Shown here one piece after another: positions 4,724 through 58,322 of a DNA stretch of 64,000 bases (the first letter of the stretch is position 1; every line of letters begins with the position of its first letter). Location: assembly GCA_053919585.1 (NCBI GenBank), contig CM132792.1. One strand, written 5' to 3'. A program made the position numbers and the translations under genes. A model generated the notes under the pieces. That model saw nothing but the letters and a program-made list of their open reading frames with translations. It did no database searches and was not told the origin of the DNA. Source of the DNA: Euprymna scolopes. Lineage: Eukaryota.

Positions 4724-4728
<5 letters not shown>
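4406..4728 (+). mobile_element. 5'-truncated copy of the 5S-headed SINE family B (full copy 57898-58322)
   Basis: Aligns by eye to 58015-58322; contains CTAGGGGAAGGTAACTCTGATGTAAAACC; ends in (AT)n. Confidence 0.8.
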
Positions 4729-4791
<63 letters not shown>

Positions 4792-19419: not shown

Positions 19420-19760
19420 ATATTACGTTTCTAAATTTTTGAAATGAGGATTTTTTATTCATATTATTTGGATTCATCGGACTACTGTTCTCATCACGTG
19501 TGTACCTTATCGAATTCGGGAGTTCGGACAGAATTTCTCCCTCTATCTAGTCTTAGCTGATAGAACAAGAACATGCTACTCCCGGAAAGTAAATAAAGGT
19601 TTTAGTTCGAAATTCATCCAAATTCTCGAGTTCGACAGAAATATTCACGAGTTCGACAGAAATACACCTGAAGAAGGTTGGAGGTTACATCGACTGAAAC
19701 GATGTGTAAATGACACTCAAGAGGAGAACAACAGTCTGATGAATCCAAATAATATAAATA
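19420..19760. mobile_element. Head-to-head pair of P1 pseudo-LTR fragments; HHR at 19663-19707(+)
   Basis: TATTATTTGGATTCATC.GACT (about 19462) is inverted to AGTCTGATGAATCCAAATAATA (about 19733); ACAC CTGAAGA A GGTTG..CGACT GAAAC GAT GTGT. Confidence 0.7.
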
Positions 19761-24570: not shown

Positions 24571-24655
24571 TAAATATTTATTTTCATATTTGTTTTCATA
24601 TTTATCTTCTCGTAAATGCTTTACTTAAAATACGTTTGGATAACTTATTTAGTAT

Positions 24656-24718
<63 letters not shown>

Positions 24719-25525: not shown

Positions 25526-25565
25526 AGTTTTTATTAATTACCATTTCCACTAAATATATATATAT

Positions 25566-25866
25566 ATGACATAATTACGTTGACACACCGGTTCCCCGTT
25601 AGATCACCAAAGTTAAGCAATGTTGAGACTAGTCAGTACTAAAATGAGGGACTATTTGGAAATTCTATGTGCTATATGTGCTCTCCGCTTAGCTCAGTAT
25701 TGTTTCCAGTCGTCTTGGACTTCTTGTCACTGGACTCAAGCAGTACTGATTCAGGAGAGGTGTGGTTAGGGATTGTGCAACCATTGCCTCACAATTTCAC
25801 GGGCAGCTTCCCTTACAGGCGTTTGACACTTGAGGCTAGTGTCTAGGAGGCATTCAATTTCTCTGT
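25566..25866 (+). mobile_element. 5S rRNA-derived SINE (SINE3-like), family A
   Basis: ACGTTGACACACCGGTTCCCCGTTAGATCACCAAAGTTAAGCAA is a 5S head; non-5S body shared with 33718; 3' GACACT/AGTGTC hairpin. Confidence 0.85.
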
Positions 25867-33388: not shown

Positions 33389-33717
33389 GAAACATTTTTA
33401 CTTGACTCTCCTCCTCACTTTCTTTTTGCTTCCTCATCTTGTCTTTTTTTTTAAAATGTCACTTTTTTTTCTCTGCACCATTTCGCATTTTTAAAACTTT
33501 AATATTAGAGCAGATATTTTTACATTCAGTTGCATAACTTCAGGATCTCCAAATTCTTACTTTCTAACAATTCGCTCATTCTAAAAAACATATACAAATC
33601 ATCAATGTTTGGTGCATTTTAGGTCAGGAAGTCGGTATCTTCCGCCAGCCTGATCTGGTAGCACCAGGGATAGTTTTGGAGAAAAAAGAAAAGAAAAAAG
33701 GTGTGTTTGCTGAATGA

Positions 33718-33960
33718 TAAAGCATAATCACGTTTGAGACATCGGTTCCTGTTATATCACCGAAGTTAAGCAGCATTGTACCTGGTCTGTATTTAAATGG
33801 GTGACAATTTGGAAATACCAGATATTGTATGTGCTCTCCGCTTATCTTGGCATTGCTTCCAGTTGCCCAGGATTTCGCCTTGCCACTGGAATCCAAGCAG
33901 TGCCGATTCAGAAGTATGGTTGAGGATCGCAGTTACATGCACAACCAGCCTCACAGAGGG
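33718..33960 (+). mobile_element. 5S rRNA-derived SINE, family A
   Basis: ATCACCGAAGTTAAGCAGC..ATGGGTGAC..TGGAAATACC; body TGCTCTCCGCTTA as at 25680. Confidence 0.85.
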
Positions 33961-44583: not shown

Positions 44584-44859
44584 TGCAAACTTTATTAATG
44601 CTCTATATGCAATAATGAACATCTACTATTTTATTAAGACTTTCTATGTTATCCTTGGATACCATCCTTTAAGATATTCTTGAAAATATAAATATATTTT
44701 TATACTAATTTTTGAATATATATAGCTATACAATTTTTGAAATAAACAAGAATTTAGGGAAATTAAATGCTCATAAATGCCAAGTCATCAGATATATACA
44801 GTAAACATTTAGATATCATTCAGTGACAGGGAGTCAGAATATTGTATTTGCACTATATG

Positions 44860-45015
44860 TAAATCCATAATCAGACAACAGCTCAGTTCCCACAGTCAAG
44901 AAAGAGTCAAGTTTCGCCTTCATTTTGGCTCATCAGTTGAACATATCTAAAATTTGGATTCAAAACCCGAATCGCTTACAGAAGAGGCGAGTACTCAGCC
45001 ACTTGAGCAACTACA
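44860..45015 (-). mobile_element. tRNA-headed SINE with hammerhead motif
   Basis: A-box-like TGCTCAAGTGG, B-box-like GGTTTTGAATCC, then GTTCAA CTGATGA GCC AAAATGAA GGC GAAAC TTGA CTC. Confidence 0.7.
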
Positions 45016-45029
45016 CCACACAAAGTCTA

Positions 45030-45240
45030 TTAGCTAACATAGATCAAGCAAACCATGGTGAAGTCCTATCAAGAGACTCTGGTTTGGATATGTTGATGAA
45101 CCCAAATGAGGGTGAAAGTCGAGTCTTGGACTTCCAGTTTGCTGGCTTTTCTGACTGTGTGAGCTGCAGCAGTGTTCTGTCGGTCAATTTAGCTCATATG
45201 CATAGATCGTCATATAATGATTAGATCACTCTGACTGACG
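45030..45240 (+). mobile_element. Second, inverted copy of the same HHR-SINE
   Basis: TTTGGATATG TTGATGA ACC CAAATGAG GGT GAAAG TCGA GTC TTGGAC..TGACTGTG aligns with the minus copy. Confidence 0.65.
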
Positions 45241-45290
45241 GTAAAAGGATTTAATAAGAATAAATGTTTAAATTCAACTGGATCTCTTGC

Positions 45291-45473
45291 GATTGACGGT
45301 AGCCGAATGGTTCGGGTCCTTGCTAATGGAGCCAGACATGACTTCTGTTGTCGGGGTTCAAATCTCTCGACTGGCGTTAATTGTGACACCCTGCACTGAT
45401 GATTCCCAAAAGGATGAAACACGCGTCGGTAGGTATTTGATAAATATTATAGTAAAATAATAATAATAATAAT

Positions 45474-45480
<7 letters not shown>
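45291..45480 (+). mobile_element. tRNA(Leu/Ser-like)-headed SINE with Sm-alpha-like hammerhead
   Basis: A box TAGCCGAATGG 45300-45310; B box GGTTCAAATC 45355-45364; CCTGCA CTGATGA TTCC CAAAA GGAT GAAAC ACGC GTC GGTAGG; (TAA)n tail. Confidence 0.8.
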
Positions 45481-45512
<32 letters not shown>

Positions 45513-48497: not shown

Positions 48498-48537
<40 letters not shown>

Positions 48538-48542
<5 letters not shown>

Positions 48543-48721
48543 AGTTATAAAATGTATATGGCGATTAAGCTACACTGAATATTCCGCATTTCATCCACTC
48601 TAGGATTCTTCAGGCTTATGCATAAGCCTGAAGAATCCTAGAAGCCTGAAGAATCCTAGAGTGGATGAAACGCGGAATATTCAGTGTAGCTTAATCGCCA
48701 TATACATTTTATAACTTACTA
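48538..48721. ncRNA. Near-perfect palindrome of two hammerhead ribozymes with intact cores
   Basis: AAGC CTGAAGA ATCC TAGAGT GGAT GAAA CGC GGAATATTCA GT GTA^ GCTT; centre TTATGCATAA; 18-bp tandem duplication in the right arm. Confidence 0.88.
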
Positions 48722-48823: not shown

Positions 48824-48889
<66 letters not shown>

Positions 48890-52702: not shown

Positions 52703-52757
52703 CGCTGCCTGATGATATCTGTTGTTTGATTGAAACAAGTGGCTGTTTGTAGCAGCG
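52703..52757 (+). ncRNA. Type I hammerhead ribozyme in a solo pseudo-LTR (52272-52791)
   Basis: CGCTGC CTGATGA TATC TGTTGTTT GATT GAAA CAAG TGGCTG TTT GTA^ GCAGCG; T-T mismatch at the base of stem II. Confidence 0.85.
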
Positions 52758-52789: not shown

Positions 52790-52860
<71 letters not shown>

Positions 52861-57440: not shown

Positions 57441-57897
57441 GATAAATTTCTCTTTTCTCCTAAAAATAAAAAAAATTAATAAATAAAAAAAACTTCAAAT
57501 TAAGTCCATATAGAATCCACGTGGTTGGATGTAAATATATATTGCTGCAGTTTTAAATTTATAGTTTCACAGAGTATATCCCTGAAGTAATTATTTGTAT
57601 TTTTTAAAAATAGTTTGCTTGAAGCATTGTTTAATGTATATATGAGAAGAAATGTAAGTTTATAGAAGGCAGAACAATGCAAAGGTTTGACGGATAGACT
57701 TAAACTGACACAACTTAAGATATAATGGTTGAACTAGCTATGCAGTTTCACTTTTATTGAGCCAATTCAAGTGACGAAGGGAAGACATCCCGAAATATAG
57801 CATCATGTATACACCGCCTGGTGCAAGTAAGAACATCCTACATGTAAAATATTGTGTGTGTGTATATACATACATATATATATATATATATTTTTAT

Positions 57898-58322
57898 ATG
57901 GCACAATCGCGCTGGCACACTGGTTCTTGCCAGATCACCAAAGTTAAGCAACATTAAGCCTGGCCAGTACCAAATGGGTGACCATTTGGGAAGTTTAGGC
58001 ACTGTATGTATTGCGCTGAGTCGTAGAAATTTCCAGATTGGTATCTGGGTGGCGCATTAATTCACTGGAGAGATGCACACCCAGTCTTCATTAAGACATG
58101 TATCTAGGAGAAGGAAACTCTGATGTAAAAACCTGCGATTTACTGCATACTCTGTCCTGTGCCAGTCGTCTGCACCGATAAAGGTTAGCAGCAATACCAA
58201 AAAGTGTGGATGGTTCTACACAAAGCCTTCACTACTATAAACAAATCATCTGCGTGGATTTTCGAGCAACTTAATTGTGACGGAAGCTCATACGTCGAAA
58301 TCTGCGGGAGAGTCTATCATAT
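57898..58322 (+). mobile_element. 5S rRNA-derived SINE, family B, with RTE-5'UTR-like central motif
   Basis: CACACTGGTTCTTGCCAGATCACCAAAGTTAAGCAAC..ATGGGTGACC..TGGGAA; CTAGGAGAAGGAAACTCTGA; truncated 5S head also at 59512-59590. Confidence 0.85.

What the first reader, a model, noticed from the sequence alone, without database searches (positions are those of the whole stretch)
44860..45480. Cluster of tRNA-headed SINEs that each carry a hammerhead ribozyme (candidate SINE-retrozyme family)
Seen: three HHR motifs within about 530 bp (44903-44942 minus, 45093-45131 plus, 45390-45433 plus). Two lie 20-30 nt downstream of Pol III A/B boxes. The first two are inverted homologues whose complementary lesions reconstruct GT(C/T)CAA CTGATGA GCC CAAATGAR GGC GAAAC TCGA GTC TTGGAC. 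The third closely resembles the Schistosoma Sm-alpha HHR as I recall it (CTGACGA GTCC CAAATA GGAC GAAAC GCGC GTC), with some differences explicable by CpG decay. Known: animal non-LTR retrozymes and PLE HHRs exist. Inference: at least two families of Pol III-driven, self-cleaving SINEs in this host, possibly mobilised by PLE RT. These three copies are probably inactive.
Basis: partly seen in the sequence, partly recalled or inferred. Interest (0 to 1): 0.85.

Follow-up and report, generated by a model that had tools for sequence, protein, structure and literature searches.

The report
Dead hammerhead-ribozyme retroelement copies
The cluster is three decayed copies of two very abundant, non-coding jumping elements of a large mollusc genome; each element joins a tRNA-gene-like piece to a self-cutting hammerhead RNA motif, a design already known from blood flukes and animal "retrozymes", so this is a new example of a known kind.

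Summary
Three hammerhead (HHR) motifs lie at the stated places, against 0.4 core matches expected by chance in the window. They belong to two unrelated repeat families of this 5.9-Gb genome.

- **Family A** has a 411-413-bp unit and at least 8,201 HHR cores. Young copies pass Rfam's curated thresholds for both Hammerhead_1 (42-45 bits) and tRNA (30-33 bits).
- **Family B** has a 343-bp unit and at least 14,592 HHR cores. Its tRNA-like cloverleaf is degenerate. Its HHR consensus has a U·U where G10.1-C11.1 should be, and it never reaches Rfam's threshold.

The tRNA-like module is not the 5' end of either element: 170-200 nt of conserved leader precede it. Copies have a fixed 3' end next to (TA)n or (AAT)n and random 5' truncation. 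Family B forms head-to-tail arrays. Family A forms head-to-head inverted pairs, and the window's first two motifs are one such pair. This is the insertion scar described for Penelope-like elements, and the genome holds thousands of GIY-YIG frames with long intact ORFs.

All three window copies are dead. No RNA evidence for self-cleavage or circles was obtained. Earlier notes of this scan describe the same kind on other DNA of this genome. Verdict: a real new member of a known kind (Sm-alpha, non-LTR retrozymes).

The parts
44836..45075 (-). Family A copy, old (73-81% identical to the family). It is 5'-truncated within the leader and its ends are approximate. It holds part of the leader, the tRNA-like module, an HHR remnant and the tail.
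   Evidence: blastn to the family consensus and to a young unit; alignment with 29 genomic copies
44953..45017 (-). tRNA-Ala(CGC)-like module of the family A copy, with A-box-like TTGCTCAAGTGG and B-box-like GGGTTTTGAATCC. It has no acceptor stem.
   Evidence: In young copies the homologous module scores 30.4-33.5 bits on Rfam tRNA (threshold 29), matching model positions 10-63 only.
44903..44942 (-). Hammerhead remnant 1. The core and helix II are intact. The cleavage site and the 3' strand of helix I are lost to an internal deletion of about 40 nt.
45076..45182 (+). Family A copy in the opposite orientation, 5'-truncated in the T-arm region. It abuts the first copy head to head. It holds HHR remnant 2 (45093-45131) and the tail.
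   Evidence: unit positions 284-358 at 80%. Head-to-head pairs recur genome-wide.
45179..45464 (+). Family B copy covering unit positions 56-343 of 343, 92% identical to the consensus. It sits where the (TA)n tail of the preceding family A copy would be.
45294..45377 (+). Degenerate tRNA-like module of family B, with a long variable arm, A-box-like TAGCCGAATGG and B-box-like GGTTCAAATCT.
   Evidence: ARAGORN at a relaxed threshold folds the family consensus into a cloverleaf. There is no Rfam tRNA hit at E<=1.
45390..45433 (+). Hammerhead remnant 3 (family B).
   Evidence: Hammerhead_1 at 21.7 bits, E=0.017; lesions listed
45465..45512 (.). (AAT)n then (AT)n microsatellite at the 3' end of the family B copy. 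It is either the tail or the target site.
   Evidence: Of 29 family B copies, 19 have (TA)n directly downstream and 12 have it upstream.

Best explanation
The cluster is a pile-up of three dead copies of two unrelated non-autonomous retroelement families. Each family's unit is ordered leader, tRNA-derived module with A and B boxes, type I hammerhead, short tail.

**Shown.**
- Both families are high-copy and dispersed.
- Copies share a fixed 3' end 36 nt (family B) or about 65-96 nt (family A) past the predicted GUC cleavage site, next to (TA)n or (AAT)n.
- 5' ends fall anywhere in the unit.
- Copies often exceed one unit: head-to-tail arrays in both families, and head-to-head inverted 5'-truncated partners in family A.

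**Inferred.**
- An RNA is reverse-transcribed at nicked (TA)n targets by a Penelope-like RT/GIY-YIG enzyme encoded elsewhere in the genome.
- Because leader sequence 5' of the promoter-like module is copied, the template must be a multi-unit or circular RNA, not a simple Pol III transcript that starts at the tRNA module.
- The tRNA module probably provides internal Pol III promoters that read through units free of T4 terminators.
- Hammerheads of neighbouring units, whose helix III is a short palindrome, probably pair as double hammerheads. This would cut out unit-length RNA that a tRNA ligase could circularise, as in animal retrozymes.

The window's first two motifs are one head-to-head family A pair. 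The younger family B copy later landed in its (TA)n tail.
For: **Copy number.** The family A HHR core with at most 1 mismatch has 8,201 genome hits and the family B core 14,592. The reversed-pattern control gives 0 for both.

**Ribozyme and tRNA models.** Family A copies reach Rfam Hammerhead_1 at 35-45 bits against a threshold of 34. Each unit of a young array also hits Rfam tRNA at 30.4-33.5 bits against a threshold of 29, ending 11 nt before the HHR.

**Head and HHR together.** They co-occur at a fixed distance in 23 of 30 loci chosen by the HHR core alone.

**Unit periods.** Family B repeats every 343 bp and family A every 411-414 bp.

**Insertion anatomy.**

| Feature | Family A (59 loci) | Family B (29 loci) |
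|---|---|---|
| 3' end | clusters at unit positions ~380-392 and 411 | at 340-343 in 23, within 330-343 in 27 |
| 5' starts | spread over all bins | spread over the unit |
| Arrays longer than 1.1 unit | 8 | 14 |
| Inverted partner at the 5' end | 25 | 0 |
| (TA)n downstream | 35 | 19 |
| (TA)n upstream | 6 | 12 |

**Orientation of inverted pairs.** Among the first 100 exact family A cores there are 8 (-,+) pairs, 0 (+,-) pairs and 4 tandem pairs.

**Match to Penelope-like elements.** 5' truncation, partial tandems, an inverted 5'-truncated copy at the 5' end, (TA)n bias and a tail extension are the published hallmarks of Penelope-like insertions (PMC8557442).

**A candidate enzyme source.** The genome holds at least 15,395 GIY-YIG candidates. 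All 150 scored pass the Pfam cut-off, many lie in 804-808-aa open frames, and they often occur as (-,+) pairs.

**Terminator avoidance.** The family A unit has no TTTT despite 35% T (P=0.0085 in dinucleotide shuffles). For family B, P=0.08.

**Predicted dimer.** Cofolding gives double hammerheads with an 8- or 10-bp helix III, 6.6-7.9 kcal/mol better than two monomers.

**RNA libraries.** RNA-seq contigs hold family A, including a 439-nt contig that spans more than one unit.
Against: - No direct evidence exists for self-cleavage, circular RNA or Pol III transcription.
- The raw-read run showed no pile-up of ends at GUC. Its one striking loose end is explained by a single genomic locus.
- Genomic 5' junctions are not significantly enriched at the cleavage site.
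- Contigs from RNA libraries cannot exclude DNA carry-over or read-through transcripts.
- The family B consensus hammerhead lacks the G10.1-C11.1 pair and scores only 21 bits, yet it is the more successful family. Strong ribozyme activity may therefore not be needed.
- Covariation in the family A helices is weak: 89.0% of cells are paired against 88.3% in shuffles, and 11 cells have changes on both sides (3 of 500 shuffles reach that).
- Family B shows no inverted partners.
Confidence: 0.75

Rival explanations
1. These are ordinary tRNA-derived SINEs mobilised by a LINE (RTE, CR1 or similar) through target-primed reverse transcription. The hammerhead would be an inherited passenger with no role, and the arrays would be occasional template jumps.
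For: 5' truncation and a microsatellite-like 3' tail, (AAT)n in family B, are also LINE-type features. LINE RT open frames lie in several of the fetched loci. The more abundant family B has a sub-canonical hammerhead.
Against: The tRNA module is 170-200 nt inside the unit, not at the 5' end. Nearly half of family B copies exceed one unit, with exact unit junctions. In family A, 42% of copies carry a head-to-head 5'-truncated partner with 8:0 orientation bias. These are Penelope-like scars, not LINE scars (PMC8557442). No LINE-like 3' tail was identified.
Confidence: 0.12
2. This is satellite DNA spread by unequal crossing-over or rolling-circle DNA amplification. The tRNA and hammerhead motifs would be fossil content.
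For: Head-to-tail arrays with a constant period exist.
Against: Arrays are short (mostly 1-4 units) and dispersed over all large scaffolds. They have a constant 3' end, random 5' truncation and (TA)n flanks. This is what retroposition gives, not satellite expansion.
Confidence: 0.04
3. These are host-exapted ribozymes or regulatory RNAs at this locus, in which the hammerheads serve a local gene.
For: None specific. Conserved intronic hammerheads exist in vertebrates (my own knowledge).
Against: All three local motifs carry disabling lesions. The window has only one ORF of 150 aa or more, far from the cluster. The copies are ordinary diverged family members.
Confidence: 0.02

Closest known systems
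Schistosoma Sm-alpha / Sj-alpha SINE-like retroposons (Ferbeyre et al. 1998 and Laha et al. 2000, as cited in PMC2770079)
   Same: Both are short non-coding high-copy retroposons that combine a tRNA-derived (Pol III-type) part with a type I hammerhead. The hammerhead's helix III is very short, so it is thought to act in dimers. Copy numbers are in the tens of thousands.
   Different: The host phylum differs (mollusc against flatworm). The tRNA sources differ: Ala(CGC)-like and a long-arm tRNA here, against tRNA-Gln-related in S. mansoni according to PMC2770079. Here a 170-200-nt leader precedes the tRNA module, and Penelope-type inverted or tandem scars and (TA)n targets are evident. Sequence homology was not tested, because no Sm-alpha sequence was fetched.
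Metazoan non-LTR retrozymes (Cervera and de la Pena 2020, PMC7229834; review PMC7761336)
   Same: Both form short tandem repeats of a few hundred bp, each with a type I hammerhead. Both are non-coding, AT-rich and dispersed. The proposed life cycle runs through self-cleaved, tRNA-ligase-circularised RNA.
   Different: Those papers do not mention tRNA-like or Pol III promoter modules: 'SINE' and 'Pol III' each give 0 hits in PMC7229834. Cephalopods are not covered. Circular RNA was not shown here.
Penelope-like elements with hammerheads in their pseudo-LTRs (PMC8557442; preprint 10.64898/2026.07.22.740005 argues that vertebrate retrozymes derive from them)
   Same: The insertion architecture matches: 5' truncation, partial tandems, a head-to-head inverted 5'-truncated copy, (TA)n preference and alternative 3' ends 20-30 nt apart. 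A hammerhead is present.
   Different: Families A and B encode no protein. No sequence link to a Penelope-like pseudo-LTR was established.
Ceph-SINEs of squids and cuttlefish (Akasaki et al. 2010; reanalysed in PMC5786205)
   Same: Both are tRNA-related short repeats of decapod-type cephalopod genomes.
   Different: Ceph-SINEs have the tRNA head at the 5' end, a CORE-plus-RTE-derived body and RTE partners. The 23-nt RTE-like signature quoted in PMC5786205 is absent from both units. No hammerhead is described for them.

Membership tests
Type I hammerhead ribozyme (Rfam RF00163) | Score at or above the curated gathering threshold (34 bits), with the CUGANGA...GAAA...GUH core and three helices | tested here: met
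   Family A genomic copies score 35-45 bits, and 50 of 75 sampled copies keep the core. The window's own three motifs do NOT meet it (at most 21.7 bits). Family B does not meet it either (21.1 bits).
Type I hammerhead ribozyme (Rfam RF00163) | G10.1-C11.1 pair closing helix II next to the core | tested here: not met
   This row is for family B. The consensus reads CUGAUGA-U-UCC...GGA-U-GAAAC, which gives U.U at that position in essentially all of 29 copies. Family A has G-C in 50 of 66 distinct sequences.
Type I hammerhead ribozyme (Rfam RF00163) | Self-cleavage at GUC | not testable with these tools
   Only indirect tests were possible, and both were negative or inconclusive.
tRNA-derived SINE | tRNA-related sequence with A and B boxes | tested here: met
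   Rfam tRNA scores 30.4-33.5 bits (threshold 29) in every unit of a young family A array, over model positions 10-63, with no acceptor stem. For family B there is only a relaxed ARAGORN cloverleaf.
tRNA-derived SINE | The tRNA-related part is the 5' head of the element, at the Pol III start | tested here: not met
   The module starts at unit position 203 of 411 (family A) and 171 of 343 (family B). The conserved leader upstream is part of genomic copies.
tRNA-derived SINE | 3' tail shared with a partner LINE | not tested
   No partner was identified.
Animal non-LTR retrozyme | Short head-to-tail repeats, each unit carrying a type I hammerhead, dispersed in the genome | tested here: met
   Periods are 343 bp (family B) and 411-414 bp (family A). 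Arrays longer than 1.1 unit occur in 14 of 29 and 8 of 59 loci.
Animal non-LTR retrozyme | Expressed as small circular RNA | tested here: inconclusive
   Contigs from RNA libraries hold family A, and one 439-nt contig spans more than one unit. Contigs cannot tell a circle from a tandem transcript or from DNA.
Penelope-like-element-dependent retroposon | Insertion scars: 5' truncation, partial tandems, a head-to-head inverted 5'-truncated copy and (TA)n targets | tested here: met
   One search gives the tallies. Orientation bias is 8 (-,+) against 0 (+,-). The hallmarks are as listed in PMC8557442. Inverted partners are seen in family A only.
Penelope-like-element-dependent retroposon | Sequence shared with the pseudo-LTR or 3' end of an autonomous element present in the genome | not tested
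   Candidate autonomous elements exist: at least 15,395 GIY-YIG candidates, with 804-808-aa open frames among them. Their flanks could not be fetched.
Ceph-SINE superfamily | Ceph domain (CORE-like part plus RTE 5'-UTR-derived part) | tested here: not met
   The 23-nt RTE-like signature printed in PMC5786205 is absent from both units.

The most novel reading that the evidence does not exclude
Decapod cephalopods, reported to have 'almost no SINEs', may in fact carry a large guild of Pol III-driven retrozymes. In this reading, several different tRNA genes were independently fused upstream of hammerheads. Internal promoters read through terminator-free tandem units, double hammerheads release unit-length RNA that is circularised, and a currently active Penelope-like element with an open frame of about 806 aa copies the circles into (TA)n microsatellites. 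A variant hammerhead with U.U at 10.1/11.1 (family B) would then be either active in a non-canonical way or dispensable, which would separate ribozyme activity from retrotransposition success.
Probability: 0.3. Interest if true: 0.55.

Novelty: new member of a known kind. Interest (0 to 1): 0.4.

Why it matters
**A second host for the design.** It adds a second, distant animal lineage to the Sm-alpha design of a tRNA-type promoter next to a hammerhead. At least two independent tRNA captures in one genome suggest the combination is selected, not accidental.

**A link between literatures.** It joins three bodies of work usually kept apart: SINEs, retrozymes and Penelope-like elements. The scars of a Penelope-type integration are found on tRNA-plus-hammerhead units.

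**A warning for annotation.** Tens of thousands of such units go unclassified, while decapod genomes are described as nearly SINE-free (PMC13218726). The 235 Hammerhead_1 hits in the giant squid genome were left uninterpreted (PMC6962438).

**A test case for the ribozyme's role.** Family B's successful U.U hammerhead offers a natural test of how much ribozyme activity these elements need.

The window's own copies are dead and have no local significance.

Tried and rejected
1. **Standard scans on the window.** Rfam at gathering thresholds and ARAGORN found no hammerhead and no tRNA. The local copies are too decayed, so family-level analysis was needed.

2. **RNA ends at the cleavage site.** In a raw single-cell oligo-dT run, 16 reads carried about 60 loose letters ending in a poly-T run directly before the first base after GUC. 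This looked like an RNA end. I rejected it for three reasons. The reads share variants that are rare in the family. Exactly one genomic locus has a run of at least 18 T directly before GGACTTCCGGTT. The two Ts after the site also blur the junction by 2 nt.

3. **Genomic 5' ends at the cleavage site.** This would be expected if cleaved RNA were the template. Among 27 (TA)n-to-element junctions, 6 start at 0 or +1 of the site and 12 lie within 3 nt of it. This is not convincing.

4. **Covariation in the family A helices.** The signal is weak, as expected for copies that decay neutrally.

5. **Partner search.** Long open frames in the fetched loci are LINE-type RT or low-complexity, with no Penelope-like ORF next to a copy. 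GIY-YIG hits on contig 1 lie hundreds of kb or more from the nearest listed family A or B core.

6. **Homology between families A and B.** They share only a 13-nt B-box match.

7. **Literature.** No paper combines hammerhead, SINE and cephalopod. The Ferbeyre 1998 paper is not held, so the Sm-alpha features are taken from PMC2770079.

8. **T4 avoidance in family B.** It is only marginal (P=0.08).

Full report
**What is in the window.** A generic core pattern matches the 64-kb window 5 times against 0.40 expected by dinucleotide shuffling, and no shuffle reaches 5. Rfam at its curated thresholds reports no hammerhead in the window, only three 5S-like hits. With permissive thresholds, 45390-45433(+) scores 21.7 bits on Hammerhead_1 (E=0.017, threshold 34) and the minus-strand motif scores 18.4 bits on Hammerhead_3. 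ARAGORN finds no tRNA. The local copies are therefore real but degraded, and the question has to be settled at family level.

**Host.** The assembly has 5.9 Gb in 925 contigs, and matches fall on contigs numbered up to 46 that reach tens to over 200 Mb. The window has about 33% G+C. Public RNA runs that hold the repeat are labelled as mollusc. This fits a decapod cephalopod, but I did not establish the species.

**Two families.**
- The stretch with the third motif (45285-45450) finds at least 3,930 candidate loci, and the best 39 are 89-92% identical.
- The stretch with the first motif finds at least 2,039 candidates at 77-88%.
- Counting only the HHR cores with at most one mismatch gives 8,201 hits for family A and 14,592 for family B. 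The reversed-pattern control gives none.
- The two units share nothing but a 13-nt B-box match, so they arose independently.

**Family A.**
- The consensus HHR is GUUCAA (older copies) or GUCUAA (younger), then CUGAUGA, GCCC, AAAUGA, GGGC, GAAAC, UCGA, GUC, UUGGAC.
- Genomic copies reach Rfam Hammerhead_1 at 35-42 bits in 6 of 20 older loci and 41.7-45 bits in young arrays.
- In the same young array, every unit also hits the Rfam tRNA model at 30.4-33.5 bits (threshold 29). The match covers model positions 10-63, from D arm to T arm, without an acceptor stem, and ends 11 nt before the HHR.
- By eye the anticodon loop reads CUCGCAU, which is Ala(CGC)-like.
- In 30 loci chosen only by the exact HHR core, the tRNA-like piece ends 5 nt before the core in 23. 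Most of the others keep the tail but have no head match.
- Of 75 sampled HHRs, 50 keep the CUGANGA...GAAAC...GUH core.
- Pair counting gives 89% standard pairs and 11 double-sided changes (3 of 500 shuffles reach this). This is only weak covariation, as expected for neutrally decaying copies.

**Family B.**
- The consensus is CCUGCA, CUGAUGA, UUCC, CGAAA, GGAU, GAAAC, ACUAGU, GUC, UGUAGG.
- Helix I has 6 pairs. Helix III is a 10-nt palindrome. The position next to the core is U.U instead of the near-universal G10.1-C11.1.
- No family B copy reaches E<=0.1 on Hammerhead_1 in 63 kb. In a small search the best score is 21.1 bits.
- Its tRNA-like module, with a long variable arm, folds as a cloverleaf only at a relaxed ARAGORN threshold and gives no Rfam tRNA hit.
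Family A is the canonical one.

**Anatomy of the units.**
- Family B cores recur every 343 bp. Family A cores recur every 411-414 bp.
- Written from the 5' end of genomic copies, family A is leader 1-202, tRNA-like from 203, HHR core at 283, cleavage after 315, and end at 411.
- Family B is leader 1-170, tRNA-like from 171, core at 274, cleavage after 307, and end at 343.
- The tRNA module is therefore internal, not a head.

**Insertion pattern.**

| Feature | Family A (59 loci) | Family B (29 loci) |
|---|---|---|
| 3' end | clusters at about 380-392 and at 411 | at 340-343 in 23, within 330-343 in 27 |
| 5' starts | spread over every bin of the unit | spread over the unit |
| Arrays longer than 1.1 unit | 8 | 14 |
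| Head-to-head inverted partner at the 5' end | 25 | 0 |
| (TA)n directly downstream | 35 | 19 |
| (TA)n directly upstream | 6 | 12 |

- Among the first 100 exact family A cores there are 8 (-,+) pairs, no (+,-) pair, and 4 tandem pairs at 413-414 bp. The binomial probability of 8:0 is about 0.008.
- One locus shows the full picture: an inverted truncated copy followed by four tandem units (L089).

**Who moves them.** High 5' truncation, partial tandems, an inverted 5'-truncated copy at the 5' end, a 30-40-bp tail extension and a bias for (TA)n microsatellites are the published scars of Penelope-like elements, which also carry hammerheads in their pseudo-LTRs (PMC8557442). A 2026 preprint argues that vertebrate retrozymes derive from such elements.
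- This genome has at least 15,395 GIY-YIG candidates. All 150 scored pass the Pfam cut-off, many lie in 804-808-aa open frames with identical scores, and they often occur as (-,+) pairs. A young autonomous family is therefore available.
The link remains an inference from architecture.

**Transcription and processing (inferred).**
- The family A unit has nine TTT but no TTTT at 35% T (P=0.0085). For family B, P=0.08. This fits read-through by Pol III from the internal A and B boxes.
- Because leader sequence upstream of the boxes is part of the copies, the template must be multi-unit or circular RNA.
- Cofolding predicts double hammerheads with an 8- or 10-bp intermolecular helix III, 6.6-7.9 kcal/mol better than two monomers. 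Such dimers are what I recall being proposed for the newt and Sm-alpha hammerheads.
- RNA-library contigs hold family A, including a 439-nt contig that covers more than one 411-nt unit. Contigs cannot prove transcription, ends or circularity.
- The one apparent RNA end at the cleavage site is a single genomic poly-T junction.
- 5' junctions are not clearly enriched at the site.

**The local cluster.**
- A family A copy on the minus strand (about 44836-45075) has its HHR broken by a deletion of about 40 nt that removes GUC.
- It abuts, head to head, a 5'-truncated plus-strand family A copy (about 45076-45182). That copy's core has lost CAACT and reads GAAAG.
- The core spacing of about 160 bp lies within the 150-562-bp range of genomic pairs.
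- A younger family B copy (45179-45464, unit positions 56-343, 92%) follows at the place of the family A tail and ends in (AAT)n(AT)n.
- All three are inactive.

**Known or new.**
- tRNA-related, hammerhead-bearing SINE-like retroposons are known from Schistosoma (PMC2770079).
- Tandem type I hammerhead retrozymes are known from cnidarians, mussels and amphibians (PMC7229834). That paper mentions neither Pol III, SINE nor cephalopods.
- No held paper combines hammerhead, SINE and cephalopod.
- The giant squid genome paper lists 235 Hammerhead_1 hits without comment.
- The Sepia officinalis paper states that decapods have almost no SINEs.
- Ceph-SINEs are a different thing.
- Earlier notes of this scan already describe tRNA-plus-hammerhead arrays with 284-345-bp units, (TA)n targets and head-to-head palindromes elsewhere in this genome. 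My family B is probably their 345-bp family.

The finding is real, the kind is known, and the lineage and the Penelope-type scars on tRNA-bearing units are the modest news.

Noticed in passing
window 25562-25680, 33715-33833, 57894-58010 (all +); also L047:587-704, L009:2092-2208: 5S-rRNA-like sequences score above Rfam's threshold (38-57 bits) and are scattered through the window and unrelated loci. They look like an abundant 5S-derived repeat. The giant squid paper reports about 24,000 such loci.
   Followed up: no
window 48540-48720: This is a head-to-head palindrome of a minimal hammerhead-like motif (CUGAAGA, AUCC, UAGAGU, GGAU, GAAAC) directly next to (TA)n at 48500-48540. The same motif recurs in loci L009, L043 and L058.
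   Followed up: partly
window 19668-19700 (+) and 52709-52736 (+): Two more hammerhead-core matches belong to other repeat families. The first motif recurs as inverted pairs in L047 and also in L013. The second recurs as an inverted pair in L035 and is followed by (TA)n at 52793. Neither has A- or B-box-like motifs within 170 nt upstream.
   Followed up: partly
G000, e.g. C12:14496712-14504984, C3:120036690-120041122, C13:17111032-17117229: There are thousands of GIY-YIG endonuclease domains, many in intact 804-808-aa open frames with identical scores and in (-,+) pairs or clusters a few kb apart. This looks like a very young, probably active Penelope-like element family.
   Followed up: partly
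G000 C29:38391775-38391804: A single family A copy begins within 2 nt of the predicted cleavage site, directly after a run of at least 18 T. It appears to be the source of the most abundant family A reads in an oligo-dT single-cell RNA run.
   Followed up: partly
window-wide, e.g. 2244-2295, 4727-4791, 24654-24718, 48824-48887, 52793-52859: (TA)n microsatellites are very frequent in the window, at about 20 or more loci. They are the apparent landing sites of these elements.
   Followed up: no
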